DNA of 64,000 bases, from positions 124,001-188,000 of the IMG/VR virus record IMGVR_UViG_3300032334_001259. One strand, written 5' to 3'. Shown here piece by piece: positions 21,948 to 64,000 of the stretch. The notes beneath the pieces were generated by a model. The model saw only the letters and a list, made by a program, of their open reading frames with translations, was not told the DNA's origin and searched no databases. Position 1 is the stretch's first letter. Every line of letters starts with the position of its first letter. A program made the position numbers and the translations under genes.

Positions 21948-22571
21948 TTATATTTTTAATTCATCAATAAATTTAGCAAGTTCTTGCTTAAGATATTTTT
22001 GAACTCGTTGATCTTGATTTAAATCTTTAGCCATTTCCAAAATGCGATGACCACCGTTCATATTCATTAGTCCTTCATAGACTGCTGTTGGGTAGGCATT
22101 AGGTGCACTTGGCTGTGCTACAATATCAACAGTAACGATATCAAAATCGCTTACTGCACCGTCGTTTTCGTTTACATTACCACTTCCACGACTACTTACT
22201 CCTAGTTTGACACCACTTTCTAACATGGTGCGAACTAAATTGCCCATTGGAGTAGGCAAAATCTTCATCTTACCATAACCGTTCGGTCCATCTAACCACA
22301 TTTCTGTAATCATATGACTTACACGATCAAGGTTAATGCGTAAGTTTGTTGGGTGATCTACTTCACCCAACACACTATAACCTGTTCTAATTTGCTTATT
22401 GAGTGTTTCAATAGCACGACTAATTTCATTAACGGGATAAACACGTTGATTTGCGTTCTTTACACCACCTTGGATGCAAATGCCCTTCATATAAAGGTTT
22501 TTGCCTTCATCAGTTGATGTTTCCATCTTTGCTTGGTCGTAACTAAGATTTTCAATAAGCAAATTATTCAT
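21948..22571 (-). CDS. gp21: Prohead protease (gp21)
   Basis: KNANQRVYP, LGEVDHP, VSHMI, GVSSRGSG, DIVAQPSAP. Confidence 0.96.
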   Translation of the reverse strand: MNNLLIENLSYDQAKMETSTDEGKNLYMKGICIQGGVKNANQRVYPVNEISRAIETLNKQIRTGYSVLGEVDHPTNLRINLDRVSHMITEMWLDGPNGYGKMKILPTPMGNLVRTMLESGVKLGVSSRGSGNVNENDGAVSDFDIVTVDIVAQPSAPNAYPTAVYEGLMNMNGGHRILEMAKDLNQDQRVQKYLKQELAKFIDELKI

Positions 22572-28031: not shown

Positions 28032-28874
28032 ATGCAAAATTCAAATCCACTTGCTAAACATTTTCGTCAGCCAGCAGTATTTCTTAAACTGCCTAGTGGT
28101 GGAAAATATTGGGCACCAGATAGTTTAGACCTTCCACCAAATGGTGAAGTAGGTATTATGCCAATGACAGCCAAGGATGAAATACTATTACGCACACCAG
28201 ATGCACTTATGAATGGTCAAGGTGTAGTAAATGTAATACAAAGCTGTGTGCCTGCTATTAAAAATGCTTGGGCAATGCCAACTATAGATGTTGATGCACT
28301 TCTTATTGCTATACGTATTGCAACTTATGGTGAAACCATGGAAATGGATAGTAAATGTCCTAAATGTGAAGCAGAAAGCCGCCATGGATTAGATTTAAGT
28401 AGAGTTCTATTTGGCGTTAGAGCACCAAATTATAATCAAATTGTAGAAATAGATGGATTAAAGATTAAGTTTAAACCACTTAACTATGTGCAAAGCACTA
28501 AAAATAACATTGCTGGATTCGAAGAACAAAAGATTATACAGTTATTAAACAATGAAAACATTGATCCAGATACACGCAAAGCACAGTTTGATATGCATCT
28601 ACAAAATATTATCAAAAGTAATATAACTTTGTTGAGTGGTGCCACAGAAAGTATTACTACTGAAGACGGAACTATTGTTACTAATCCAGAGTTTATATCA
28701 CAATTCTACGATAATACTAACAACCATATTATTAAAACTGTTCAAGCAAAATTAAGAGAATTTGCTGATACAGCACAATTACCACCTACACGTGTGCAAT
28801 GTGAAGCATGTGATAACGAATATAATGTTAATGTAACTTTTGATTACGCAAATTTTTTCGAGCCACTATCTTAA
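28032..28874 (+). CDS. gp26: Baseplate hub assembly/tail chaperone (gp26-like)
   Basis: LPSGG, PMTAKDE, D.DALLIAIR..TYGE, two CxxC pairs, NFF near the C-terminus. Confidence 0.8.
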   Translation: MQNSNPLAKHFRQPAVFLKLPSGGKYWAPDSLDLPPNGEVGIMPMTAKDEILLRTPDALMNGQGVVNVIQSCVPAIKNAWAMPTIDVDALLIAIRIATYGETMEMDSKCPKCEAESRHGLDLSRVLFGVRAPNYNQIVEIDGLKIKFKPLNYVQSTKNNIAGFEEQKIIQLLNNENIDPDTRKAQFDMHLQNIIKSNITLLSGATESITTEDGTIVTNPEFISQFYDNTNNHIIKTVQAKLREFADTAQLPPTRVQCEACDNEYNVNVTFDYANFFEPLS

Positions 28875-29089
28875 CTCTCACCCAAGAAGAATTATTGAAG
28901 TTAGTGGCGGATTATGAGGGTGAAGTAAAGAGTATTAAAAAGAATATTCTTAAAATGTGTTGGTATATGCGTGGTGGTGTCACTTATGACGAACTCATGG
29001 ATATGAGCGTAACTGAACGTAACATTATCGGTAGCATTATTGAAGAAAACTTGGAAACTACTAAAAAGTCAGGTATGGCTTTCTTCTGA
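28853..29089 (+). CDS. gp51: gp51-like segment, probably made as a -1 frameshift extension of gp26
   Basis: Frame open from 28844 with no ATG/RBS at its 5' end; slippery T TTT TTC at 28853-28859; WYMRGG..Y.E...MS..ER motif. Confidence 0.65.
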   Translation, partial: FFRATILTLTQEELLKLVADYEGEVKSIKKNILKMCWYMRGGVTYDELMDMSVTERNIIGSIIEENLETTKKSGMAFF

Positions 29090-29098
29090 TCAGTTTTA

Positions 29099-29520
29099 AG
29101 ATGCCTACGGCATCTGTTCAGGGACTATCGTCCCTTCACTTTCTTTCTTTCTTTCATTTCTCTTCTAAGATTTAATATTAGTTTCATTTAGACTGGATTT
29201 TGGACATAGATTTCCTTAAGCAGGAAATCCATATCCAAACAGCTTCATTTGAGCTATCATAAGGACATTAGCAAACGGAACTTGAAACCAAGTGGGGCGG
29301 TTAGCCTGTACCCCTTCACATCCTGTAGATTTTACCAACGGACCTACTATAAACCCTTGCTAACGAACTTATATTAGTAGAGGTTGCTTTTTCTCAGAGC
29401 CTCAATCATTTAGCCTAACGTTTGGCCAAACGATTCCATCATAGCAATGTCGGGGTGCTACCAACCTTCAGTTAATACCTATTTGTGGATATGCTGCCTA
29501 AATTGCCTGTGAGCCAAAGG
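29099..29520 (-). ncRNA. Candidate large structured ncRNA of unknown family
   Basis: 463-bp gap with no ORF of 60 aa or more; several helices whose non-Watson-Crick pairs are G-U only on the minus strand; possible pseudoknot. Confidence 0.65.
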
Positions 29521-29552
29521 TGAGTTATAATCTATATATCGTAAAATTAAAA

Positions 29553-30110
29553 TTACCAGAGATTTTCTTCAAAGCCTAATTGTATTGCTATTCGTGTTTC
29601 TGGAATGTTTTCTACACTGTGTGGTACAAAAGCATTCAACAGTGTCCATTTATACAATGGAACTACAATACTGTCAATTTCTTTTACCTGGTCATACTCT
29701 AATTGTAGCCCACGTGAAAGATTAATAGAACTGTCAATTGCCTCGTAAAAAACAGTTCTATGATGTTCTCCGCCTGTTTGTATCAAATACATTAGTGTGT
29801 ATTTTCTTGTTCTGTCAATATGCGGAGCAACCATACTACCCCGCACTACTGTTGTTTGAGCCAAACTACAGCCATTAAACTTATCACTTATATTAGTTTT
29901 AATCCAATCAAATAGCTGTGGATGCAGTGATTGTTTATGAAATCTTTTGTTTTGCTCCTCTATATCATTACGAACTATAGTTCTGTCCATGTATGGTATA
30001 GTTGGATTTTGAACATAAGGATCAAATATATCTTGCGAAGTATAATTTAAAGTTAGATCAATTAACTGTGTTGGAACACTTGGTAAATTGTCTAATATCT
30101 TGTAATGCAT
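29553..30110 (-). CDS. Fe(II)/2OG-oxygenase-like (double-stranded beta-helix) protein
   Basis: HxD (PHID), distal His (PHSVEN) and Arg (TRIAI). Confidence 0.65.
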   Translation of the reverse strand: MHYKILDNLPSVPTQLIDLTLNYTSQDIFDPYVQNPTIPYMDRTIVRNDIEEQNKRFHKQSLHPQLFDWIKTNISDKFNGCSLAQTTVVRGSMVAPHIDRTRKYTLMYLIQTGGEHHRTVFYEAIDSSINLSRGLQLEYDQVKEIDSIVVPLYKWTLLNAFVPHSVENIPETRIAIQLGFEENLW

Positions 30111-30964
30111 TACTCACCCCTAATACTTTTAATAATTTTTATAAATTTGTTTTCACTTGTAATTTCTATTCTACCAAATTCATTAACAAAATCTTTCCAA
30201 GATTGGTTATTACGAATTGTCTTGATTTGATTGTTTATATTTTGAATTTGTTCTTGAGATAAGTTGGCACCAACTAAAACTATACTATCTTGCAATAGTG
30301 GTAGATCCACAGCCTTTGGTAGCAATTTATATACGCTTGGTATTGTGACACCATCTTTAACAATATCACTTTCACTACCACTAAACAAACAATTTACTTT
30401 GTCTAAATTTTTACCTAACCATTCACTATCAACAAGAGTATAATCAAATTCATTGCCTAGAATTACTTCTCTAGCCTTACCACTATTGCCTACAATTACA
30501 ATATTTGCACTGTCTCCATTAGGAAACGCACCTATGATTTTTTGAATTATATTATTGCTTGCTGTGGTAATTGCAATGTTTTTGCGAGTAGTCTTATCTA
30601 AGAAATTCTGCATTCCTAAATTAGTTTTATCTTTGCGATAACAAAGACTGTAACTATAATAGTATAGTTCTTGGATCACTTTAACATTATCACTATATGT
30701 TAGTTTACAAGCATCATCAACTACACCCCAACTACCTGTAAGATAAACTAATGGTTGTTTTTCATTCTCAATTGCATTTTTAACAACTGCACAATTTGGT
30801 AGAGCATTTATGGTATTTTTGATACCAGATTTTTCCTGTATTTCTTGTAGTATTGTTGCAGTTTTACCAGTAACTCCACCTGGTGGAACGCCAACTGTAA
30901 TATCAAAAGCATATGCATTTGATGCAAATAAAACTGCAAATAATGTTGTAATATATCGTATCAT
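30110..30964 (-). CDS. TctC/Bug-like periplasmic substrate-binding protein (divergent)
   Basis: AAGGAG RBS supports ATG 30964; signal peptide ending NAYA; VGVPPGGVT resembles TctC P..PGG.TD; follows tctA. Confidence 0.6.
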   Translation of the reverse strand: MIRYITTLFAVLFASNAYAFDITVGVPPGGVTGKTATILQEIQEKSGIKNTINALPNCAVVKNAIENEKQPLVYLTGSWGVVDDACKLTYSDNVKVIQELYYYSYSLCYRKDKTNLGMQNFLDKTTRKNIAITTASNNIIQKIIGAFPNGDSANIVIVGNSGKAREVILGNEFDYTLVDSEWLGKNLDKVNCLFSGSESDIVKDGVTIPSVYKLLPKAVDLPLLQDSIVLVGANLSQEQIQNINNQIKTIRNNQSWKDFVNEFGRIEITSENKFIKIIKSIRGE

Positions 30965-30974
30965 TCTATTCTCC

Positions 30975-32276
30975 TTAAAAATATAAATTATACACAATGT
31001 GTATAACTGAATCAAATTGTTGCGCCAGCAAAAACCCTAATACTAGTGGTAATAAGTCATGTCGTCGTAACAAAAACCCAATCGGTGCAAAAATTGCACT
31101 ACAAATCAAATAAAAAGAAAGTTGATTTGTATTATACCCCATTTGAAATACTGCAAATAATAACAAAACTATACTTAAAGTATTAAAAAGTCTTAATCTT
31201 TTAACCATTGCTTTAACTAAACTTGCAGCAAGCGGCCAACTGCAAACAAACCCAATTATATTTGCGAATCCAAAAATAGCAAATATCCACCAAAAATTAT
31301 TAACCAACCAATCATAACTGTAATTTAAACCACGAGTAGATGTAATATCATATAGTAGATATTCACTTGCATTTATTGGTATCGCAAAACAAAACAATGG
31401 AATAAAACTAGCAACCAATCCACTGTTATGTGCACTATCACTAGAAACCAAACCACGTATATCACCATCTTTGTTATATGTTTTACGATTAACAAACTTT
31501 TCAACAGCCCATGCAAAATTACTGCTAATAGTAATACCCAACGAAGGTATAAAACCACAAACAAAACCAATTATACTACCTCGCATAAAAGTATAAGGAT
31601 TTATATCAATAATGTATTTTTTGCTTTTTATGTTAACTAGATTTTTGATTTGTGCTGATGACGATAACATCATGGGTAAACTATATAGAAACACTAATAT
31701 AATAATAGTAGGTATACCGCCATATAGATAAGGAATATCAAAGGTGGCGAATTGTTGTTTTGTTACTGGATCATACCCTACTTTACCTATAAAATAACCA
31801 CTTACCAAAAATACCGCAGATAATAATATATTTTTACTAGTGAATATAGTAATAAGGTAAGTTAACAATAATATACAAAACTGTAGTTTGAAATTGTATA
31901 AAACAGAGTAATTGTTACCTATCCAAAAAATGCTACAAGCTAATATGACTGCTACAATACTACCTAAAAAACTTGCCATAGCGCCACTGCCTAATGCAGT
32001 ATTAGCTTGACCACGTAGTGTTAACGCATATCCTTCTTTGACACTTGGTAAACTAGTAGTTTCAGTTGGTATACCAAGTATTGTTGCACTAGCACCACCA
32101 AAATACTGTGTACATGTAACCATACCAATATAAAAACTTAAAACATTATGTGGGTCTAAATCAATTAATAGTGGATAAAACAATACCATAGCCAAACTGT
32201 TATGTAAGCCAGGCATAATTCCAACAAATAAACCAGTTGCGCACCCTAATAATGCAAAAAGTATTATTTCACTCAC
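30975..32276 (-). CDS. tctA: Tripartite tricarboxylate transporter large subunit TctA
   Basis: GIMPG, YFGG..ATILGIP..T.S....EGY, GFIPSLG, SDSAHNSG..FIPL..AIP; many transmembrane segments. Confidence 0.88.
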   Translation of the reverse strand: MSEIILFALLGCATGLFVGIMPGLHNSLAMVLFYPLLIDLDPHNVLSFYIGMVTCTQYFGGASATILGIPTETTSLPSVKEGYALTLRGQANTALGSGAMASFLGSIVAVILACSIFWIGNNYSVLYNFKLQFCILLLTYLITIFTSKNILLSAVFLVSGYFIGKVGYDPVTKQQFATFDIPYLYGGIPTIIILVFLYSLPMMLSSSAQIKNLVNIKSKKYIIDINPYTFMRGSIIGFVCGFIPSLGITISSNFAWAVEKFVNRKTYNKDGDIRGLVSSDSAHNSGLVASFIPLFCFAIPINASEYLLYDITSTRGLNYSYDWLVNNFWWIFAIFGFANIIGFVCSWPLAASLVKAMVKRLRLFNTLSIVLLLFAVFQMGYNTNQLSFYLICSAIFAPIGFLLRRHDLLPLVLGFLLAQQFDSVIHIVYNLYF

Positions 32277-33366
32277 CTAACAAATACCTTTTGCTCCATG
32301 TTCCAACTAAACCGTTGTGTATATTGTTTCCATTTATAAAATATGGATCAACATTATTTGAAATCCATTCTAAACCTGTAAAATATTCCGTAGCAAAATC
32401 ACTGTTACTATCCCATATCCACCGATTCTTTTCTTTTAATATTGATTTTTCTTTTCCTAAACTAAAAGTTTTATCACTCCAATATGGATAACATGCGGCA
32501 CGTACCGCAGAAAAATATTCGCCACCATTGAAATTACCATCATTATTGAAGTTTTTTTCTATAAATTCAAGTGTATAAGTTTTATTAATATAATTTTTCA
32601 CTAAGTGTGATTGTTTTATTGTTACTAATGGCGAGTCAGGACTTACATAAAAAGGTTCTAAACTTATTGGTGATATTGAATTATAACTATTTCCAAAATT
32701 ATAAGCATTAGTTACATCTAAAAAAGCACTATACCAAACACCATTTTCAAACCAAATTCGTGGTTTTTCTAATCCAATTATTACACCTACTTTATTTTTT
32801 TCACTCTTCTTTAACCAATCACTATTTTCAAAAATTAATTTTGGTTTACATAGTTGTTCTAGTGATAGTGATGGTTCACTTGTCATAAACCACTCTATAT
32901 TTGGCATTATACCTTTTTCAAATTGTGGTTTCATATCCATTTTTGAAACTTTTATACCATTAATGATAATGATTGAGTTAAGCAATTCACTACCAGCATT
33001 TAAAACTTCACTGTTTGCTAAATTGTTTTGTAAATCATAACTGCTATACCAATAAGCAACTTCATCTATTTTAATATTATTTTTGAGAAATACTTTAAGT
33101 GCATTACTGCTATCGCTGCCACCGCTATAAAGTAAAATAAGATAATCATACTTTTGACGCAGCTGTAATGCTCGTTCCATGTATAAATCTTCAATATTTG
33201 ATTGCGGTTCATTTTTCCAATCATGACTACCAAAAATATTATCATGGTAATAAAAACGTATATCATAGCTGTTTCGTGATTGCGCCTCTATAATAGTCTG
33301 TAGTTTGTTATAATAAATGTGTTGATTGTCTAACAACCAATGACCAAACTGTGCTGCATTACTCAT
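32269..33366 (-). CDS. PP-loop (adenine nucleotide alpha-hydrolase-like) ATPase, unknown substrate
   Basis: LLYSGGSDS PP-loop; start placed at ATG 33366 just after a -10 box. Confidence 0.75.
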   Translation of the reverse strand: MSNAAQFGHWLLDNQHIYYNKLQTIIEAQSRNSYDIRFYYHDNIFGSHDWKNEPQSNIEDLYMERALQLRQKYDYLILLYSGGSDSSNALKVFLKNNIKIDEVAYWYSSYDLQNNLANSEVLNAGSELLNSIIIINGIKVSKMDMKPQFEKGIMPNIEWFMTSEPSLSLEQLCKPKLIFENSDWLKKSEKNKVGVIIGLEKPRIWFENGVWYSAFLDVTNAYNFGNSYNSISPISLEPFYVSPDSPLVTIKQSHLVKNYINKTYTLEFIEKNFNNDGNFNGGEYFSAVRAACYPYWSDKTFSLGKEKSILKEKNRWIWDSNSDFATEYFTGLEWISNNVDPYFINGNNIHNGLVGTWSKRYLLGE

Positions 33367-33371
33367 AAAAA

Positions 33372-33400
33372 ACCTTAACAAAAAAATATATATAAGTCAA
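33372..33400 (-). promoter_or_regulatory. Sigma70-like promoter, leaderless geometry
   Basis: TTGACT-N17-TAAGGT-N5-ATG. Confidence 0.65.
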
Positions 33401-34038: not shown

Positions 34039-35807
34039 ACTGTAGTTATGTCGCTTCCATAACTAGTAAAACCATTTTCTTTTGTTACAGTAAGAATATT
34101 ATTAACACGGCCACTTAATTCTTCACGATGTGATACAAGGAAAATACTCTTGCCACGCTCACGTGTCATACGTTTAAGAATAGCCAAACTGTTTTCAACA
34201 CCACTGGCATCCATACCACTATCAATCAATTCATCAATAAACAACAAATTAATATTTTGGTATAGATTTTCCCAAACATCACGAAACGCCCAACTTAGTG
34301 AAAGAATAAGACGATTGCGTTCACCACGTGATAAGTTATCAAAATCAAGGTCACGACCAAGTTCAGTAATTTCTACAGATAGGTCATTAATAAACTTAAC
34401 TTCATGTGGTAATCCAATAGAACTCAAGTATGCGCCAAGTCTGCTATTAAGATAGTTAAGGTTCTGATCAATAATCTTCTTACGAACAAAACTATCTTTG
34501 CTTACGAGCATTTTAAGTAAGAACTCTTGGTGTTCTTGCATTTGTGTGAGATTATTAATAGTATCCCAACTAATTTCAACCAGTGCAGTGCTTTCCATAT
34601 CACCAATTTGTTCACTATATGGATCAGTTTCTGTTGCTTTCTTTTCTAACGTGACCGCAAGATTGTCAACCGTGCTACGATGTTCAAGTGCTTGTTCTAA
34701 CGTGTCATATATTACAGTGGGTGCATCACCAATATCTGCAAATTGTTCAAGCACAGCCATGTGTTCCCAACGTTGTGTTTCATTTGACAGTATTTGTGCT
34801 ACGCTTTCACCAAGTAGTTTCTTTTTAGACTCAATCATTTTTTCTTGATTACTATCATGTAACTCACCACCACAAGCATAACAACGGTGATCTTTGAGTT
34901 GTGCTATTTCTTGAGTAAGTTTATCACGTGTGCGTTCTTCTTTTGCATTAGCAGCATCAATACTTGCAATCCATTTCTTGGCTTGGTCACGCCTCTTTAC
35001 ACCTTCATGGTATAGAGCAAGCGCACGATGATTAGCAATTTCTTCATCAATATCAATAGCAACAAGATCACGTAGGTGTTTTTCTAGCGTAAGAACATCT
35101 TCTTCGTGTTTAGTATGCCATAGTTTTTGACGTTTTTTTAAATTTTCAATTTGTTCTGCAATACGCAGATTAGCATCTTGCTGTGCCTTAATACGAATCT
35201 TTTCTTCTGTAATAGCATCTTTGGTTGATTTAATTTGGCTTTTAAGTTGTTCAGCCTTTTCACTTAAGATTGTAACACCAAGCAACTGCTCAATAATTTG
35301 GCGTTGGTCATTGGCTCGCATTGCCAAGAATGGTTCTGTATAAGTGTTGAGTGCCACAACATGCTTGAACATGTCATGTGTCATACCAAGCAGTCGTTCA
35401 ATGTCACCTTGTGTTTCACGGCTGTCACCTTGGCTATCATCTACATAATCAGTTTGTTCATTGCCATTAATATATAATTTAGTAAACGTAGGTTTTCTGC
35501 CACGTTCAATGCGATAATCTACCCCACCAACTTCAAAGTCAACCGTAACAACCATGTTCTTGGCATTGGTTTTGTTAATAAGGTTATCTTTCTTGATATT
35601 AGTAAGGGCTTGACCGTAGAGACCATAACTCAAAGCATTTATAATGGTTGTCTTACCTGTTCCATTACGTGCTCCAGTATCATCACCTCCTAAATCCAAG
35701 TTCTCTCCGAGTACAAGAGTTAGGTCACTACGGTCAAAGTGTACAGCTTGGGTCGCATTACCCACGCTCATAAAGTTTTTAGCGGTAAGACTTTTAAGTT
35801 TCAACAT
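34035..35807 (-). CDS. gp46: Recombination exonuclease ATPase subunit (gp46/SbcC/Rad50)
   Basis: KNFMSVGN, Walker A NGTGKTT, CYAC zinc hook, LSRGE signature, LFIDE Walker B, VSH. Confidence 0.95.
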   Translation of the reverse strand: MLKLKSLTAKNFMSVGNATQAVHFDRSDLTLVLGENLDLGGDDTGARNGTGKTTIINALSYGLYGQALTNIKKDNLINKTNAKNMVVTVDFEVGGVDYRIERGRKPTFTKLYINGNEQTDYVDDSQGDSRETQGDIERLLGMTHDMFKHVVALNTYTEPFLAMRANDQRQIIEQLLGVTILSEKAEQLKSQIKSTKDAITEEKIRIKAQQDANLRIAEQIENLKKRQKLWHTKHEEDVLTLEKHLRDLVAIDIDEEIANHRALALYHEGVKRRDQAKKWIASIDAANAKEERTRDKLTQEIAQLKDHRCYACGGELHDSNQEKMIESKKKLLGESVAQILSNETQRWEHMAVLEQFADIGDAPTVIYDTLEQALEHRSTVDNLAVTLEKKATETDPYSEQIGDMESTALVEISWDTINNLTQMQEHQEFLLKMLVSKDSFVRKKIIDQNLNYLNSRLGAYLSSIGLPHEVKFINDLSVEITELGRDLDFDNLSRGERNRLILSLSWAFRDVWENLYQNINLLFIDELIDSGMDASGVENSLAILKRMTRERGKSIFLVSHREELSGRVNNILTVTKENGFTSYGSDITTV

Positions 35808-46614: not shown

Positions 46615-49600
46615 ATGGCTACTAATACTCGTCAAACCAATATATTTGCAGCTGAAGATTGGAAGAAAGTTTATACAACATTCTCCAATGCTGATTTCCA
46701 AAGTTATGATTTTGAAACGCTTCGCAAAGTATTGGTTGATTACATCAAGACTTATTATGCAGAAGATTTCAACGACTTTATTGAAAGCAGTGAGTATGTA
46801 GCACTACTTGATTTGATTGCATTTATGGGACAAAGTGTTGCTTTTCGCACTGACCTTAATGCACGTGAAAACTTTCTTGAAACTGCAGAACGCCGTGATA
46901 GCGTCCTGAAACTAGCAAAACAATTAAATTATGTTCCAAACCGTAATCGTGCAGCTAATGGATTATTAAAAATTAAATCTGTTAATACTACTGAAAACAT
47001 TTTTGATGTTAATGGCAGTAACTTAAGTCGTGTAACAGTTAATTGGAATGATGCAAACAATGCGGCTTGGGTAAGCCAGTTCACACAGATTCTTAATGCG
47101 GCTATTACCAAATCTACAAAGATTGGTAAACCATATGCAAGCAAGACTATTAACAATATTCGCACTGAACAATATAACATTGCAGTACCAAATACTATAC
47201 TTCCAATCTTTGCTTTTAACAGCACAATTAATGATGTTTCAACTAATTTTGAAATTGTGAGCGCAAACATTCTTAACACTGATACTATAAGTGAATATGA
47301 ACCAGGTAGTCGTGGACAATTTGGTATGATTTACCAAAATGATAGTCGTGGTAATGCTTCTTCAAACACTGGATATTTCTTATATTTCAAACAAGGTAGT
47401 TTGAATAGCACTGACTTCCTTATCACAGAAAAGATTGCTAATCGTGTTATTGATGTAGATGTTGCTAATATCAATAACAGTGATATATGGATGTATGAAA
47501 TTACTAATGGTGCTATTGGTAATAACTGGACACAGGTTCCAGCTACAAGTAGTAGCAGTGCAATTTATAATTCCACAGCACGTGGTATCCGCACTCTTTA
47601 TAGCGTTAATACACGCATCAATGACCAAATATCACTAGTGTTTGGTGATGGTAGCTTTGCAGATATTCCTATTGGTAACTATCGTGTTTACTATCGTGTA
47701 AGCAACGGTTTAACTTACCGTATTACACCGAATGATTTAAACAATGTTACTGTTGCTGTTCCTTATATCAGTAGCACTGGTAAGCCAGAAACACTTACAA
47801 TTACTGCAAGTCTACAGTATACTGTAAGTAATAGTAGTCGTCGTGATTTAACAAATGAAATTAAGATTAAGGCACCACAGTCTTATTACAGTCAAGGTCG
47901 TATGGTAAATGGCGAAGATTACAATACTTTTCCATATACAAGTTATAGTGACATTGTTAAAGTAAAATCTGTAAATCGTTATGCTAGTGGTGTAAGTCGT
48001 GGTTTAGATATTACTGACCCTACTGGCAAATATACTTCTACTGATTTGTATGCACGTGATGGTGCTCTTTATAAAAACCAATACAATCAGTTGCTGACTT
48101 TTATATATAATAGTCGCAATGATATTATTAATGTTATCAACACACAAATCTTGCCGATTGTTCAAGATTACCCAATGCGGCATTTTTATTTTGAAAACTA
48201 TACGCCAATAGATTTTGCTACATTACAACCAACTACTTGGGAACGTAGCACAGATGATACTACAAGTAGCACAGGTTTCTTTTTAGATCCTGCTGATAGC
48301 ACAGATACACCAGTTCAAATTGGCAATAGCACAACAACGTATCGCAAATACTTACAAGTTGGTAGTTTGATTAAATTTACTGCACCAACAGGTTATTATT
48401 TTGATGCTACAAATACACTTGTATTAGGTAGTCCAAGCCTACGCAGTGATCGCACTTATGTATGGGCAAGTATTCAAAGTATTACAGGTAGTGGTGCAAC
48501 TACTGTATTAGTTGCTGGTCGTAATATTGGTGCTGTTACTATAAGTGAAAGCATACCAACTGGTGCTATCATAAGTTCAGTTTATACACCATTTACAACT
48601 AATTTCCAATATACTACAATTAATACAATTGTAAACTATATCTTAAACAAAACAGAATTTGCACTTATATATGATTACACTAAAACTGCTGGTGTAAACG
48701 ATCCTTGGACTATTATACCTATTACTAATGTAAATCAAAGTAGTGAATTTAATTTAGGTACACAATATACTACTAATGATAGTAGTTGGTTATTCTTGTT
48801 TACCACTGATACTATAAAATATACTGTAAAATATCGTCAGCTTGATTTTGTATTTGGCAGTCAAAATCAAGTAGCGTTTATTAATACAAATCCACAGATT
48901 GTTTATGATGCTACTACTAACACACGTGTTCGTGATAACATTCGTTTAACAACAGTTAATAGTGGTTTAAGTAAAGATGTTAATATGAATGTTTACAAAA
49001 ACTTTACAACAAGCGATGGTTATAGTGATACAAGTCGTGTATATGTAACATATCCTATAAGCAATACTAATCAGTTGCCAACTGATCCAAGCATTTTTAG
49101 TGAAGCAACTGCTGGCACACCTATATTACTTTTTTACGAGCGTTATAATGATGCACAAAATCTTGTGCGTTATAGATTGTTATCAACAGGAACAATTATT
49201 GCAACATTTAACACATATAGTGATATTAATTATGTTCGTAACAATTATCCAGTTAGTACAGTGTTTTATGCACTTTTAGATCAACTTTTTTATAGAATTG
49301 ATATTACTAATACTGTCACATATCTTACAAACGTGACTAGTAGTTATCTAGCATACTATGGTCGTCAAGACATGGTATTTGAATATCAACATAATGCAGA
49401 AAATACTCGTCGTCTTGATCCAGCGGCCACAAACTTGATTGACTCTTATATTCTTACACGCAGCTATGATGAAAGCTATCGTAATTATGTTTATGATAAT
49501 ACGAACACTGTTGCAAGACCTGCAGATTTAGATACAGTTCAATTAAACAATAGTTATAGTGGATTGTTTAATTATAAGATGATAAGTGATGAAATGATAT

Positions 49601-50007
49601 TAAATCCTGGTGTTTATAAACTGCTATTCGGAAGTAAGGCTGATGTTCAACTGCGTGCTAATTTTCAAGTTGTTAAAAATAGCAACACTACATTAAGTGA
49701 TACAGAAATTAAAACTCGTGTCATAGATGAGATCAACCAATATTTCAGTTTAGATAATTGGGATTTTGGTGACACTTTCTATTTCAGTGAATTAGCTGGT
49801 TATCTTCACAGTAAGTTAAGTAATTACATCAGTAGCATTGTATTAGTTCCTAATGATGCAACAAGTTATTTTGGTAGTCTTTTTGAAATTCGTTGTCAAC
49901 CAAATGAAATTTTCTTAAGTGCTGCAACTGTTGATAATGTAGAAATAGTTCAAAGTGTATTGAGTGGCATTAACAGTGCTGGCATTAATCTGTATCAGGG
50001 ATATTAA
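46615..50007 (+). CDS. gp6: Baseplate wedge protein gp6-like (1130 aa)
   Basis: DF..LR..L, ENFLETA.RR.SV..LA..L.Y.P, FGDG.F..IP, Q.RMV..EDY; TAAATA at 46594-46599. Confidence 0.88.
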   Translation: MATNTRQTNIFAAEDWKKVYTTFSNADFQSYDFETLRKVLVDYIKTYYAEDFNDFIESSEYVALLDLIAFMGQSVAFRTDLNARENFLETAERRDSVLKLAKQLNYVPNRNRAANGLLKIKSVNTTENIFDVNGSNLSRVTVNWNDANNAAWVSQFTQILNAAITKSTKIGKPYASKTINNIRTEQYNIAVPNTILPIFAFNSTINDVSTNFEIVSANILNTDTISEYEPGSRGQFGMIYQNDSRGNASSNTGYFLYFKQGSLNSTDFLITEKIANRVIDVDVANINNSDIWMYEITNGAIGNNWTQVPATSSSSAIYNSTARGIRTLYSVNTRINDQISLVFGDGSFADIPIGNYRVYYRVSNGLTYRITPNDLNNVTVAVPYISSTGKPETLTITASLQYTVSNSSRRDLTNEIKIKAPQSYYSQGRMVNGEDYNTFPYTSYSDIVKVKSVNRYASGVSRGLDITDPTGKYTSTDLYARDGALYKNQYNQLLTFIYNSRNDIINVINTQILPIVQDYPMRHFYFENYTPIDFATLQPTTWERSTDDTTSSTGFFLDPADSTDTPVQIGNSTTTYRKYLQVGSLIKFTAPTGYYFDATNTLVLGSPSLRSDRTYVWASIQSITGSGATTVLVAGRNIGAVTISESIPTGAIISSVYTPFTTNFQYTTINTIVNYILNKTEFALIYDYTKTAGVNDPWTIIPITNVNQSSEFNLGTQYTTNDSSWLFLFTTDTIKYTVKYRQLDFVFGSQNQVAFINTNPQIVYDATTNTRVRDNIRLTTVNSGLSKDVNMNVYKNFTTSDGYSDTSRVYVTYPISNTNQLPTDPSIFSEATAGTPILLFYERYNDAQNLVRYRLLSTGTIIATFNTYSDINYVRNNYPVSTVFYALLDQLFYRIDITNTVTYLTNVTSSYLAYYGRQDMVFEYQHNAENTRRLDPAATNLIDSYILTRSYDESYRNYVYDNTNTVARPADLDTVQLNNSYSGLFNYKMISDEMILNPGVYKLLFGSKADVQLRANFQVVKNSNTTLSDTEIKTRVIDEINQYFSLDNWDFGDTFYFSELAGYLHSKLSNYISSIVLVPNDATSYFGSLFEIRCQPNEIFLSAATVDNVEIVQSVLSGINSAGINLYQGY

Positions 50008-50010
50008 TAA

Positions 50011-53000
50011 ATGGCAAAACGTAAAAGTGAAAACTTTTTACCACAATCTTTTAGAACATTAAGCAATCGTAGATTTTTAAATGCCACTATAGATCCACTT
50101 ATACAAGAGCCAAGTCTTAAGAAGATGTATGGTTATATTGGACAACAGGACCAAAGTCCTGTGTTTGAAAAAGGTGACTATTACATTAATGAAAACGATA
50201 GCTATAGTCAGTTCTATCAATTAGAACCAGGTGTAGTAATCAAAAAACGCCAGTATGGAACTAACACTTATAAAGTAGATAATGTTTACAACTATGTTGA
50301 TTTATTAAACCAGATTGCAGCTGACGGTGGTATTAACAACAATCATGATAGATTGTTTAGTAATCGTTATTACAGTTATAATGGTTTTATTGACCTTGAT
50401 AAGTTAACAAACTATCGTCAGTATTATTGGGTGCCAGGCGGTCCACTTACAGTTGACGTAACTGCAGAAAATACACTTACACAAAAAGATTTTTATATTC
50501 ACCGTAACAGTTATGTTGCTAATAATCAAACTGAATTACAAAGTGCTGCACTTGGTGCAACTGGTTATAGTGTGGATGGTTACAACAATGTTATTAATCC
50601 TACACTTACGCTAGTTCGTGGTGGTAGTTATAATTTTTATGTAAATCAAGACACTGACTTCTGGATTCAAACTGAAATTGGTGTAGATGGTGTAAGTAGT
50701 GTACAGAATAATATTTCAACTCGTGATGTATTGGGTGTTTCTAATAATGGAGCAAAAAGTGGAACTATAACATTTACAGTTCCATTAAGCACTGCACAAG
50801 ATTATCTTATTAACTATCCAACAATTAGCCAAGCTGTTGATTTAATTGTTGATGATGTTACTTACGAAGAATTACAAGGACAAAATTACGATACATTTAT
50901 TCTATCAAACGGATTAGATGGTGTTCGTGCATTCGATGGAAAGTATATTGTTTTAACAAGCACAACTGGTTGGGGAGATATAGCATCTACACAATGGGGT
51001 GGTGTTTGGCGTATAAATGTAGGCAGTGATCCAGCTGCAGCCAATTATCGTTTAATGAATTTAACATATATTGCAGATTGGACAGTTTTAAACAAAGTAT
51101 TTGTTACTCAAGGTGATGTATATGGTCACGTTTATGCATACAAAGATTTATTTGGTGTTATTCAAAAATTTCCAACATTAAGTGCAGCACAAAGTGTTCT
51201 TTATTATGTTGATGCTACAAATCCTCTTGTGTACGGAACTATTCAGCTTGTTGATCCACAACCAAATAGTTTACTAAATGTTAATGATATACTTGGTCGT
51301 GAAAACTATACAAGTCCAAATGGTGTACAGTTTACAAGTGGACTTAAAGTAAAGTTCACTGGCATTGTCGTGCCTGCTGAATATCAAGGTAATGAATATA
51401 TTGTTGAAGGTGTAGGTAGCAGTATTAAACTTATTAAATATGCTGACCTTGTTACACCAGAAATAATTAATACTAATCTAGGTAGTAGTTTTGGTAATAG
51501 TCGTGGTTATGATGCTGATGGCACTGGTTTCGATGGAACTACAAATAGTCCAGAACAAAAAGATTATGTAACAATTAATCGTGCTAGTATTGATGGTAAT
51601 AGTTGGAGTCGTAACAATCGTTGGTTCCATCGTGATGTGCTGCAAGCAGCTGCTGATTATAATAATGTAAGTTATAGCTTTGACAGCAATCAACAAGCAA
51701 AGCGTCCTATTATTGAGTTTTTACCTAATATAAAACTTTACAACTATGGAACAAACTATGCTGGCAGTGTCACTTGTATAGACAGTGTTACAACAAGTGC
51801 TTTTGCACAAGTAGAGGGTTTTAACAGTTATGCTGTAAAGACTGATGGTGTTTATAATAGTGATGGTATACAATTATTGAATGGACTGTCAGTTATCTTT
51901 ACACAAGAAACTGATCCTGTAAAGCGTGCAACTCTTTATCGTGTGCAGAATAATAAAACACGTGCAAGTGCAACTTATAATATACTAACAAATGCTTTTA
52001 CTAACAGTGGTGTAAATTATCTTAACATAAACAATATTGCAAATCTTGCTGTTGGTCAGCATGTTACTGGTAGTGGTATCCCAAACTTTACTACTATTAC
52101 AAGTATTGATACTGTATTTGATCGTGTTTATATAAGCAATAATTTAACACAAGATGTTCCTGCAGGAACTACAATTACATTTGATAACAGTTATGATCAA
52201 ATACATCTTGTACCTATTAAAACATTTACCAATGGCGATACTGTTGTTGCTATGGAAGGTGTTGAGAATCAAGGTAATATGTTTTATTACTTGGATGGTG
52301 AGTGGATTCGTTCACAGATTCGTAACAGTCGTCCACAATTTCCACTATTTGATGTCATCGATAAAAATGGTTATAGTTTTGGTGATCAAACAGTTTATGC
52401 AAGTAGTGACTTTAGTGGTAGTGAACTATTTGGTTATGCAGTAGGAACTGGAACACGTGACAGTGAATTAGGGTTCCCACTTGTTTATAAGAGCATTGGT
52501 AATCTTGGTGACATTGTATTTGAAAACTATTATCAAACTGATACATTTCATTATAGTTTAAATCAAGTTGACCAAGAAGAAAACATTAATCAGGGTTTTG
52601 CAGCGGTTATTGTTGGTTGGAACAACTATACTCTTGCTAATGGTTGGTATCGTGTAAGTGATAAATCTAAACAATACATTACTAAAGTTTTCACTGCAAA
52701 TGCAGTTCAACTCAATAATTTTGATCTTGGTGTTGTTTATGATAACAGCTATTATGAAAATAATATATTCGTTTATGTAAATGGTTCACTACAATCAAAT
52801 TCAACATATGCATTACAGACAAGCAGTTTAACAAGTGTAGTTGTTTTTAATCAAGATTTAAATGTAAATGATCGTGTATTTGTTAAAATTTATGGAACAA
52901 GCACAGTGTACAAAGAAACATACACTATGCCACGCAATCTCACAAACAACAGTGAGAACACAGAATTTACAACTATTACGCTAGGTCAAGTTCGTAATCA

Positions 53001-63999: not shown

Positions 64000-64000
64000 A

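What the first reader, a model, noticed from the sequence alone, without database searches (positions are those of the whole stretch)
29167..29520. Large strand-specific structured RNA of no family I recognise, in an otherwise gene-packed genome
This is the largest non-coding gap in the window. Minus-strand helices: an 18-bp hairpin 29199-29239 with 2 G-U; stem 29344-29380 with 3 G-U; stem 29262-29268/29318-29324 with 2 G-U enclosing GGGG/CCCC (29294-29314) and CTTG/CAAG (29281-29292) hairpins; and stem 29441-29461 with 1 G-U. All these wobbles would be A-C mismatches on the plus strand. The loop GUUAGCAA (29364-29357) is complementary to UUGCUAAU (29274-29267), a possible pseudoknot. There is a perfect palindrome CGTTTGGCCAAACG (29419-29432) and AAAUGA recurs four times (29154, 29184, 29245, 29406). 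I see no tRNA, tmRNA, RNase P or group I/II cores. Inference: a novel phage ncRNA (ribozyme, scaffold or sponge, or replication primer).
Basis: partly seen in the sequence, partly recalled or inferred. Interest (0 to 1): 0.85.

Follow-up and report, generated by a model that had tools for sequence, protein, structure and literature searches.

The report
Unknown large structured jumbo-phage RNA
Between two converging genes of a giant phage lies the gene for a roughly 400-base folded non-coding RNA of a family no database describes. Relatives in over a hundred uncultured phages, and probably dozens of cultured jumbo phages, keep its helices, two pseudoknots and an odd pair of identical 7-base boxes, but its job is unknown.

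Summary
The finding is real. Window 29520-29095, minus strand, encodes a structured RNA of about 330-420 nt between convergent genes of a Rak2-like jumbo phage. It has no Rfam, tRNA or tmRNA match. More than 120 IMG/VR contigs carry homologues, which I reduced to 97 representatives below 92% identity.

- **Helices:** they show heavy compensatory change. A covariance-model alignment of 55 sequences is 97.7% paired against 77.7% in shuffles.
the pairing 29364-29357 with 29274-29267 covaries.
- **Second pseudoknot:** 29339-29335 pairs with the loop 29304-29300. It is 98% paired over 86 sequences, with four pair types at one position.
it is not conserved.
- **Twin boxes:** two 7-nt boxes (29250-29244 and 29189-29183) flank the 18-bp hairpin. 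They are identical to each other in 77 of 86 relatives yet differ between relatives (29 variants). I found no complementary partner in cis.
- **Cultured phages:** diverged copies with the same pseudoknot and twin boxes occur in cultured phages. E. coli phage 121Q has one in the same syntenic slot, and GAP32 and XaC1 also carry copies. There are 2-5 copies per genome, all unannotated.

Function is unknown. My best guess is a trans-acting scaffold RNA with a bivalent, lineage-specific recognition module.

The parts
29490..29520 (-). 5' leader with two AGGCA/GGCW boxes. The RNA's 5' end and promoter probably lie here, but neither is mapped.
   Evidence: The GGCW..GGCW..AU motif is conserved upstream of helix H1 whatever the upstream gene is. 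In many relatives the upstream ORF's TAG stop lies inside it. No sigma-70-type promoter was found on this strand.
29435..29489 (-). H1 (29489-29486 with 29438-29435) enclosing hairpin H2 (29461-29457 with 29445-29441). The H2 loop ACCCCGACAUU is conserved.
   Evidence: A3 alignment of 24 same-architecture relatives: H1 is 97% paired with 3 of 4 pairs showing double changes. H2 is 83% paired with 4 of 5.
29419..29432 (-).
   Evidence: 82% paired, with 4 of 5 pairs showing double changes, for example CGCA..UGCG and CGUA..UACG.
29405..29417 (-). Conserved single-stranded motif UAGGCUAAAUGAU.
   Evidence: The AAA.G positions are invariant in 88 sequences.
29380..29403 (-). H4, GAGG:CCUC, closing the near-invariant 16-nt loop CUCUGAGAAAAAGCAA.
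   Evidence: 100% paired. The pairs show 3-5 pair types each (helix 1). The GCUCUG loop is invariant.
29344..29377 (-). H5, a 10-pair hairpin whose loop carries the 5' strand of pseudoknot 1 (29364-29357).
   Evidence: 10 of 10 pairs show double changes in A3. 6 of 6 modelled pairs show double changes in 55 sequences.
29267..29274 (-). 3' strand of pseudoknot 1 (UUGCUAAU), which pairs with 29364-29357.
   Evidence: The longest complementary run between the loop and this segment averages 7.7 nt within a sequence and 5.1 between sequences. Runs of at least 6 nt occur in 87% versus 29% (85 sequences). Examples of change are GCUAACAA:UUGUUAGU and ACACUG:CAGUGU.
29335..29339 (-). 5' strand of pseudoknot 2 (GUUGG, after the invariant CCG).
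   Evidence: It pairs with 29304-29300. Pairing is 98% over 5 pairs in 86 sequences. One position shows AU48/GC27/UA6/CG5. Slid controls give 2-59%.
29294..29314 (-). H7, GGGG:CCCC, with a near-invariant 13-nt loop (UACAGGCUAACCG). Loop bases 29304-29300 form pseudoknot 2.
   Evidence: The loop bases G, G, U, A, C .. ACCGCC are invariant in 86 sequences. The stem is 99-100% paired.
29277..29323 (-). H6b (29323-29321 with 29279-29277), which closes the junction holding H7 and H8 (29292-29289 with 29284-29281).
   Evidence: H6b is 91-94% paired, and its outer pair shows AU29/GC25/UA25. H8 has 4 of 4 pairs with double changes.
29326..29332 (-). AAAUCUA, a copy of the 3' strand of the long hairpin (29214-29208). 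It offers a possible alternative partner for the hairpin's 5' strand.
   Evidence: The two segments change in parallel in three lineages: AAAUCUA, GGAUCAG and GUGAA. The aligned columns are about 82% identical.
29238..29258 (-). H9 short stem presenting twin box 1. The prefix CUC is at 29253-29251 and the 7-nt box AAAUGAA is at 29250-29244.
   Evidence: H9 is 73% paired with 5 of 6 pairs showing double changes. The box rule is described in the next entry.
29199..29239 (-). H10, an 18-bp hairpin with 2 G.U pairs.
   Evidence: The upper 8 pairs covary strongly in 86 sequences, for example GC30/CG28/UA26 at one pair.
29183..29192 (-). Twin box 2. The prefix UCU is at 29192-29190 and the box AAAUGAA is at 29189-29183.
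   Evidence: Box 1 equals box 2 at all 7 positions in 77 of 86 sequences. There are 29 different boxes. Between sequences the boxes share 3.9 of 7 positions and never all 7. No Watson-Crick partner column or cis complement was found.
29095..29182 (-). 3' tail. It holds a purine-rich spacer, then hairpin T1 (29139-29116) with tandem G.A pairs and a GAUA loop, then hairpin T2 (29114-29100).
   Evidence: The T1 motif GARCG..AGYGAA is found in 56 loci of the family. On the plus strand the same T1 inverted repeat (29120-29135), followed by a T-run, scores as the terminator of the 64-aa ORF. The RNA's 3' end is not mapped.

Best explanation
SHOWN. Window ~29520-29095 (minus strand) is the gene of a stable, highly structured non-coding RNA. 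It belongs to a large, undescribed family carried by Rak2-like jumbo phages.

Its 5' two-thirds is a conserved core. This core holds helices H1-H8, near-invariant loops and two pseudoknots. Its 3' third is a module in which a long hairpin (H10) is flanked by two short stem-loops. Each stem-loop carries the same lineage-specific 7-nt box.

INFERRED. The RNA acts in trans. No gene follows it on its strand.

- The invariant, pseudoknotted core is a folded platform for a protein partner or for chemistry.
- The twin boxes are a bivalent address. They are two copies of one short recognition sequence, and they engage two copies, or two sites, of a single partner.
- That partner is most simply a nucleic acid read by base pairing. 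This would explain why both boxes must stay identical while the sequence itself is free to drift between phage lineages.
For: Family and structure:
- The gap DNA is 85% identical in phages whose neighbouring baseplate-hub protein is only 65% identical.
- At least 120 IMG/VR hits were found, giving 97 representatives.
- A covariance model finds the RNA in most other gp26 loci.
- Pairing is 97.7% against 77.7% in shuffles. The covariation score is 0.534 against 0.141 (0 of 500 shuffles reach it). Slid controls give 37-56%.
- H10 covaries.
- Both pseudoknots are supported.

Strand:
- Fold z-scores are -4.4 on the minus strand and -1.7 on the plus strand.
- The G.U and tandem G.A pairs make sense only on the minus strand.

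Trans action:
- The RNA ends at convergent genes in the window, in 121Q and in XaC1.
- The upstream gene differs between relatives: a 185-aa ORF, a PP-loop protein, TctA, a PDDEXK nuclease or a GIY-YIG nuclease.

Twin boxes:
- They are identical in 77 of 86 sequences, with 29 variants.
- They have no cis complement.
- Box spacing is 42-64 nt with no codon periodicity.
- The rule also holds in cultured phages: CGUCAAG/CGUCAAG in 121Q, UCGUCAG in GAP32 and GCGUCAA in XaC1.
Against: - No partner has been identified. The reverse complement of each phage's own box is not enriched in the ~10 kb around its locus (0.71 versus 0.64 per locus). It is not enriched in the window either.
- Predicted accessibility of the boxes is only moderate: 0.49 and 0.59 unpaired, against 0.29 for the hairpin between them.
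- Parallel change is not confined to the boxes. It also occurs in the AUGNC segment before each box and in a copy of the H10 3' strand. That pattern fits a conformational switch at least as well.
- There are no expression data for any member. Transcript ends and the promoter are unmapped.
- In the cultured phages the boxes are much less variable, which would also fit a protein-binding site.
Confidence: 0.4

Rival explanations
1. Conformational switch. The 5' strand of H10 can pair with its downstream partner (forming H10) or with upstream copies of that partner. Those copies are the H6-loop copy at 29332-29326 and the AUGUCC at 29268-29263. The duplicated segments, boxes included, are the two alternative arms of a switch that responds to a ligand, a protein or ongoing transcription.
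For: Three separate segments upstream of H10 are direct copies of the segments that follow it, and they change in parallel with them.
Against: The 7-nt boxes have no complement in the H10 5' strand or anywhere else in cis. A pure switch therefore does not explain why the boxes must be identical. No downstream gene or obvious expression platform exists on this strand in the window.
Confidence: 0.17
2. Processing module. The two boxes are identical cleavage or ligation sites. An endoribonuclease, or the RNA's own core, cuts at both. This releases, or circularises, the 42-64-nt H10 unit, as toxin nucleases do with type III antitoxin repeats.
For: Identical sites flanking a unit is what repeat-processing systems show. 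The boxes co-vary only with each other. The intervening unit is a conserved-structure hairpin.
Against: No ToxN/AbiQ-like nuclease or other dedicated nuclease is consistently adjacent. The neighbouring nucleases are a resolvase-like PDDEXK protein or homing-type GIY-YIG proteins, and they vary between loci. There is only one unit, not a tandem array. The large conserved core would be left unexplained.
Confidence: 0.15
3. Replication-origin transcript. The RNA is an origin primer or R-loop former, as at ColE1 RNA II or T4 oriF/oriG. Its folding controls hybrid formation, and the purine-rich 3' tail forms the persistent RNA-DNA hybrid.
For: The locus sits next to the recombination/replication module (gp46/gp47, resolvase; RNase HI in phage Phosso). 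The 3' spacer is purine-rich. Cultured genomes carry 2-5 dispersed copies, as multiple origins would be.
Against: Two pseudoknots and invariant loops are more elaborate than known origin transcripts need. I found no AT-rich unwinding element or origin-protein gene. This remains speculative.
Confidence: 0.12
4. A DNA-level element with no RNA function, such as protein-binding direct repeats with an inverted repeat, a recombination site or a homing-endonuclease target.
For: Homing-type endonuclease genes cluster beside it in relatives. The twin boxes are direct repeats in the DNA.
Against: Compensatory base-pair changes occur across about ten helices and two pseudoknots. G.U and G.A pairs are strand-specific, and the folding bias is strand-specific. 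None of this is expected for a DNA site.
Confidence: 0.03
5. A divergent member of a known RNA class that the models miss (group I or II intron, RNase P RNA, tmRNA, 6S, GOLLD/ROOL/HEARO, phi29-type pRNA), or a broken or short protein-coding region.
For: Rfam models can miss phage variants. In relatives an upstream ORF ends at the RNA's 5' edge.
Against: No Rfam match appears even at E<=10 in the window or in GAP32. ARAGORN finds nothing. The helix order does not fit the P3-P7 pseudoknot of group I introns or P4 of RNase P (my reading). Substitutions follow base-pairing rather than codon periodicity, indels are frequent, and no ORF is conserved.
Confidence: 0.04

Closest known systems
GOLLD and ROOL RNAs (large ornate ncRNAs, often phage- or prophage-borne, function unknown)
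   Same: They are several hundred nucleotides long and multi-helix, with pseudoknots and near-invariant loops. They are carried by phages, are not cis-regulatory and were found by comparative analysis.
   Different: There is no sequence or model similarity, since the Rfam models give nothing. This RNA is smaller. It is tied to Rak2-like jumbo phages and has the twin-box module. No tRNA genes adjoin it.
phi29 pRNA (packaging RNA)
   Same: It is a phage-encoded structured RNA in which short loop sequences co-vary as a pair between related phages. In the window the RNA lies in the structural-gene region, with the portal gene 4 kb away.
   Different: The pRNA loops are complementary to each other, giving intermolecular pairing and a ring. 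Here the two boxes are identical, not complementary. There is no Rfam pRNA match. In cultured phages other copies lie far from structural genes.
Type III antitoxin RNAs (ToxI and relatives)
   Same: A unit is bounded by identical short sites, and phages can carry mimics.
   Different: Those are tandem arrays of 34-45-nt repeats next to a toxin endoribonuclease gene. Here there is one unit, no adjacent toxin and a 250-nt conserved core.
ColE1 RNA II and T4 oriF/oriG origin transcripts
   Same: They are non-coding transcripts near replication or recombination genes. This RNA has a purine-rich 3' part that could hybridise to DNA, and cultured genomes carry several copies.
   Different: No origin has been mapped here. 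Known origin transcripts are not known to need a doubly pseudoknotted core with invariant loops.
Unnamed candidate structured RNAs catalogued from IMG/VR (PMC10690425)
   Same: They come from the same data source and were found by the same kind of evidence (covariation in phage intergenic regions).
   Different: That catalogue's candidates average 67 nt, and the ones discussed sit upstream of gp20 or gp32. I could not check whether a fragment of this RNA is among them. No description of the whole RNA or of the twin boxes turned up.

Membership tests
Any Rfam 15 family (4227 models, including group I/II introns, RNase P, tmRNA, 6S, SRP, GOLLD, ROOL, HEARO, pRNA and riboswitches) | A score at or above the family's gathering threshold. 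| tested here: not met
   There are 0 hits in the whole window. At E<=10 the only hits are miRNA and CRISPR-repeat noise on the 18-bp hairpin, at 15-19 bits against 37-160 needed. There are 0 hits in five cultured-phage loci and only noise in the GAP32 copy.
tRNA / tmRNA | A cloverleaf or tRNA-like domain with a tag ORF, as detectable by ARAGORN. | tested here: not met
   There are 0 genes in the window and 0 in eight related loci.
Group I intron | A P3-P7 pseudoknot core with a G-binding site, a P1 with a G.U at the splice site, and flanking exons of an interrupted gene. | tested here: not met
   There is no RF00028 hit. No ORF continues across the element, and the upstream gene differs between relatives. 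The order of helices and pseudoknots differs from the group I pattern: H5 loop to post-H8 strand, and pre-H6 strand to H7 loop.
Type III toxin-antitoxin antitoxin RNA | A tandem array of near-identical 34-45-nt repeats immediately upstream of a ToxN/AbiQ-type endoribonuclease gene. | tested here: not met
   Only the 7-nt boxes, plus short flanks, are duplicated. Neighbouring proteins give no toxin family in Pfam or PHROGs. The PADLOC library was not searched.
Retron / DRT-type template ncRNA | An adjacent reverse-transcriptase gene, with a template bounded by repeats used for priming or template jumping. | tested here: not met
   No reverse transcriptase is among the neighbours. Box spacing is variable (42-64 nt) with no period of three.
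phi29-type pRNA | Two loops complementary to each other (intermolecular pairing), a gene at the genome end, and binding to the portal. | tested here: not met
   The boxes are identical, not complementary. No Rfam match was found. Portal binding cannot be tested here.
Cis-regulatory leader (riboswitch or attenuator) | A position in the 5' UTR of a regulated gene on the same strand. | tested here: not met
   In the window, 121Q (gp26 copy) and XaC1, the RNA runs into the 3' ends of convergent genes. In GAP32, BF and the second 121Q copy a co-oriented gene does follow, so this is not excluded for every paralogue.
New family proposed here (working definition) | The CCG-YYRN strand pairs with the H7 loop NYRRC (pseudoknot 2), and the H7 loop contains AC.GG..RACC. 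| tested here: met
   This holds in the window and in 86 of 86 aligned relatives. It also holds in 121Q (GUUGC:GCAAC), GAP32 and XaC1 (GUUGU:ACAAC).
New family proposed here (working definition) | A long hairpin is flanked by two copies of one 6-7-nt box. | tested here: met
   This holds in the window (AAAUGAA twice) and in 77 of 86 relatives at all 7 positions. It also holds in 121Q, GAP32 and XaC1.

The most novel reading that the evidence does not exclude
The RNA is a programmable, bivalent guide. A conserved, doubly pseudoknotted core recruits a phage or host effector, or is itself catalytic. The twin 7-nt boxes are a rapidly evolving address that base-pairs with a chosen nucleic-acid target present in two copies or sites. 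Candidate targets are a host tRNA or other abundant host RNA, a rival phage's transcript, or DNA. Each phage lineage retargets by changing both boxes together. This would be a new class of RNA-guided system in jumbo phages, and it is present in cultured E. coli phages.
Probability: 0.18. Interest if true: 0.92.

Novelty: categorically new. Interest (0 to 1): 0.8.

Why it matters
Large, intricately folded RNAs are rare, and each class so far has revealed unusual biochemistry (ribozymes, RNP machines, RNA cages). This one has four features that make it worth pursuing.

- **Widespread.** It occurs in more than 100 uncultured phage contigs. A diverged form appears in 62 records of cultured jumbo phages, including E. 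coli phages 121Q and PBECO4 and Cronobacter phage GAP32. It is unannotated in nearly all of them.
- **More conserved than neighbouring proteins.** The gap DNA is 85% identical where the adjacent baseplate-hub protein is only 65% identical.
- **Likely trans-acting.** In the window and in two cultured phages it runs into convergent genes, with no gene after it on its strand.
- **An unusual evolutionary rule.** Two boxes must be identical to each other but may take almost any sequence. I know of no described RNA class with this rule.

Because diverged copies appear to exist in phages that grow on laboratory E. coli, its function can be tested directly by deletion, box swaps, pull-downs and structure probing.

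Tried and rejected
- **Known families.** Rfam at gathering and permissive thresholds and ARAGORN gave nothing.
- **Direct DNA similarity.** Searching the window's gap against 50,697 phage records found nothing, near or distant. The link to cultured phages came only through a covariance model, then XaC1, then blastn.
- **nhmmer profile.** It found nothing in cultured-phage gp26 loci.
- **Bacterial genomes.** The relaxed pattern gave 120 hits, all chance matches in GC-rich genomes with none confirmed by profile.
- **Cis partner for the boxes.** I searched for a 6-nt complement, G.U allowed, anywhere in about 600 nt of 81 sequences. I also ran mutual information against every column of both half-alignments. 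Both found nothing.
- **Local trans partner.** Each phage's own box complement is not enriched in the ~10 kb around its locus or in the window.
- **Boxes as a genome-wide motif or promoter.** The motif is not enriched. An apparent -35-like TTGACG on the opposite strand in 121Q does not hold in GAP32 (my reading).
- **Boxes as codons or start sites.** There is no consistent stop or start, and no spacing period of three.
- **Boxes pairing with a tRNA anticodon loop.** Box position 6 is A in every variant tabulated from the 78 uncultured representatives (GAP32's box has G there), which would fit U33. Positions 1-2 also co-vary and would face purine 37/A38, so the fit is poor. This is inference only.
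- **Neighbouring nucleases as RNA-guided partners.** The PDDEXK protein looks like the resolvase of the gp46/47 module. The GIY-YIG genes look like homing endonucleases. Neither is constant.
- **PA5oct ncRNA002.** This RNA-seq-supported, 451-nt RNA from a related phage is not a homologue by the model.
- **Typed dot-bracket strings.** I avoided typing long ones. Pseudoknot statistics were therefore computed in scripts rather than with the count of structure pairs.
Full report
**What is there**

The 463-nt gap 29090-29552 lies between the stop of a 64-aa plus-strand ORF (28895-29089) and the stop of a 185-aa minus-strand ORF (29553-30110). The 64-aa ORF sits downstream of a T4 gp26-type baseplate hub gene (28032-28874). 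The genome is a T4-like jumbo phage. It has a gp20-type portal and gp46/47-type nuclease subunits, and the window matches a 338-kb IMG/VR contig. Its hub protein is 30-34% identical to those of Rak2-like cultured jumbo phages such as Atu_ph07, XaC1, RaK2 and 121Q.

**Checking the observation**

The minus strand folds far better than shuffled versions of itself: -130.8 kcal/mol, z = -4.4, 0 of 100 shuffles as good. The plus strand does not (z = -1.7). Rfam 15 gives no hit at gathering thresholds anywhere in the window. At E<=10 it gives only meaningless miRNA-precursor matches to the 18-bp hairpin. ARAGORN finds no tRNA or tmRNA.

**Relatives**

The gap has no DNA match among 50,697 deposited phage genomes. 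Fifty IMG/VR loci encoding relatives of the hub protein were fetched. In loci whose hub protein is only 65% identical, the gap DNA is 85% identical. It is therefore more conserved than the neighbouring proteins.

Two patterns built from the most conserved motifs widened the set. The first found 39 loci. After removing duplicates and a few chance matches inside GC-rich ORFs, 97 representatives below 92% identity remained.

The usual arrangement is gp47, gp46, then a small nuclease, then the RNA, facing the convergent small ORF(s) and gp26. The small nuclease is either a resolvase-like PDDEXK protein or a homing-type GIY-YIG protein. In the window four extra genes, including a TctA-family transporter, lie between the PDDEXK gene and the RNA. 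The upstream gene varies, and nothing follows the RNA on its strand. This argues for an independent, trans-acting RNA gene.

**Structure**

Using j = 29498 minus the window coordinate, the window RNA has these elements:

- H1: 29489-86 with 29438-35.
- H2: 29461-57 with 29445-41.
- H3: the palindrome.
- A conserved single-stranded UAGGCUAAAUGAU.
- H4: 29403-00 with 29383-80, with an almost invariant 16-nt loop.
- H5: 29377-68 with 29353-44.
- H6b: 29323-21 with 29279-77, closing a junction with H7 (29314-11 with 29297-94) and H8.
- H9, presenting box 1.
- H10: the 18-bp hairpin.
- Box 2.
- A purine-rich spacer and two hairpins, T1 and T2.

In a MAFFT alignment of 24 relatives with the same architecture, H1 to H9 are 73-100% paired. 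Most pairs show double (compensatory) changes, including all 10 pairs of H5.

A covariance model of the H4-H7 core aligned 55 diverse members. On that alignment 97.7% of cells are paired, against 77.7% in shuffles. The covariation score is 0.534 against 0.141 (0 of 500 shuffles reach it), and slid controls give 37-56%. That alignment is fitted to the model, so I weigh it together with the sequence-only alignments.

RNAalifold on the sequence-only 86-member alignment of the 3' half shows H10 pairs with three or four pair types each.

**Pseudoknots**

The loop and its partner match better within a sequence than between sequences. The mean longest run is 7.7 nt against 5.1 nt, and runs of at least 6 nt occur in 87% against 29%.

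A second pseudoknot emerged from APC-corrected mutual information. The strand after the invariant CCG (29339-35) pairs with five bases of the near-invariant H7 loop (29304-00). Over 86 sequences it is 98% paired. The pair types are AU48/GC27/UA6/CG5 at one position and UA74/CG12 at another. Slid controls give 2-59%.

**The twin boxes**

The heptamers after CUC (29250-44) and after UCU (29189-83) are the same in the window (AAAUGAA). They are identical to each other at all seven positions in 77 of 86 relatives. Yet there are 29 different heptamers across the family, for example AGAUGAU, GGAUAAU, AACAAAA, AACGAAA and ACGAAAU. Boxes from different sequences share 3.9 of 7 positions and never all seven.

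The few exceptions differ at the first or last position or are misaligned. No column anywhere in either half of the RNA covaries with the box columns in a Watson-Crick manner. No 6-nt complement occurs at a consistent place in about 600 nt.

Box spacing varies from 42 to 64 nt without a period of three. The box complement is not enriched near the locus or in the window.

Two further upstream segments are also parallel-varying copies of segments downstream of H10. These are AUGNC before each box, and a copy of the H10 3' strand in the H6 region. Mutually exclusive pairing of the H10 5' strand is therefore possible.

**Cultured phages**

The covariance model gave a weak hit (13.6 bits) in the unannotated gap near gp26 of Xanthomonas phage XaC1. 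That sequence shows features the model does not score:

- The pseudoknot-2 complementarity (GUUGU:ACAAC).
- A hairpin flanked by twin GCGUCAA boxes.
- The T1 motif.

Its core is about 91% identical to unannotated DNA in 26 cultured jumbo phages. The 651-nt GAP32 gap element is conserved in 62 records, with 2-5 places per genome. No Rfam hit was found, and the fold z-score is -7.9.

E. coli phage 121Q has one copy in exactly the window's syntenic slot, on the strand opposite gp26. There pseudoknot 2 reads GUUGC:GCAAC, a compensatory change relative to GAP32 and XaC1. The twin boxes are CGUCAAG twice. A second 121Q copy has CGUCAAA and CGUCAAU.

I rate homology between this cultured-phage subfamily and the window's family as probable, not proven. 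The individual model E-values are 0.02-0.07.

RNA-seq of the related phage PA5oct reported four ncRNAs (PMC7318152). The one I tested is not a homologue.

**Mechanism**

What is shown is a conserved, strand-specific, doubly pseudoknotted RNA with a twin-box module, not followed by a gene in the window.

What is inferred is that it acts in trans. The invariant core would be a platform for a protein or for chemistry. The twin boxes would be a bivalent address read by base pairing. That is the simplest way to explain two sites that must match each other while their sequence drifts.

The rivals are a conformational switch, a processing unit bounded by identical cleavage sites, and an origin transcript. 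None is excluded, and I give none more than 0.17. A purely DNA-level element, a missed known family and a coding region are each unlikely.

**Novelty**

I found no description in Rfam or in the searchable literature. An IMG/VR catalogue of short candidate motifs may contain fragments. As an RNA class with this architecture and the box-identity rule it appears new.

Noticed in passing
window 46615-64000 (+): An ORF of at least 4663 aa runs from 50011 off the end of the window. It is in frame with the preceding 1130-aa ORF (46615-50007) across a single TAA. Read through, the two would give a product of at least 5826 aa. This is either a giant protein split by, or read through, one stop, or two adjacent genes.
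   Followed up: partly
window 30975-32276 (-); L086 3526-4878; L010 7180-7926: The phage carries a TctA-family tricarboxylate-transporter membrane gene (Pfam E = 2e-62). A relative has the same family immediately upstream of the RNA. Another relative has an ABC-type permease nearby. These are unusual cargo for a phage.
   Followed up: partly
L130 929-1357 and 1896-2486; L100 3934-4368; L137 6943-7371; L127 2743-3810: GIY-YIG (SegE-like) and NUMOD3-type homing-endonuclease genes repeatedly sit directly beside the RNA gene in relatives. The RNA gene may be a conserved target or landing site for homing.
   Followed up: partly
L331 (GAP32 35090-35805), L330 (Serratia BF 30239-30940), L333 (121Q 192.7-193.4 kb), L095 4037-4874: Cultured Rak2-like jumbo phages hold 2-5 dispersed, unannotated (or spuriously ORF-annotated) copies of a conserved 450-650-nt element. 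Some copies start right after a -10-like box and a terminator-like hairpin.
   Followed up: partly
L010 5459-5500 and equivalents; window 29497-29520: In many relatives the upstream ORF ends at a TAG inside the RNA's conserved 5' leader (..CAUAGUCC), after a C-terminal Q-A-x repeat. The window keeps this leader as non-coding DNA with in-frame stops.
   Followed up: partly
L021-L023 5636-5783 (+): In one clade the RNA lies on the same strand as gp26 rather than the opposite one, so the locus has been inverted.
   Followed up: no
window 29116-29139 (-) and relatives: Hairpin T1 has conserved tandem sheared-type G.A/A.G mismatches, a bulged A and a GAUA/GAAA loop (motif GAGCG..AGCGAA). It looks like a protein-binding RNA module. 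On the plus strand the same inverted repeat serves as a terminator.
   Followed up: partly
window 32269-33381 (-); L010 5459-6577: A 370-aa protein with an SGGxDS (PP-loop ATPase-like) motif is conserved near the locus. It is 28% identical between the window and L010, and no Pfam family is assigned.
   Followed up: no
L332 (PA5oct 21951-22401): The RNA-seq-supported ncRNA002 of phage PA5oct is not a model hit. It carries GUAGGCAAC near its 5' end, the same octamer-like motif found just upstream of many members of this family. This may be a shared start or promoter element, or it may be chance.
   Followed up: no
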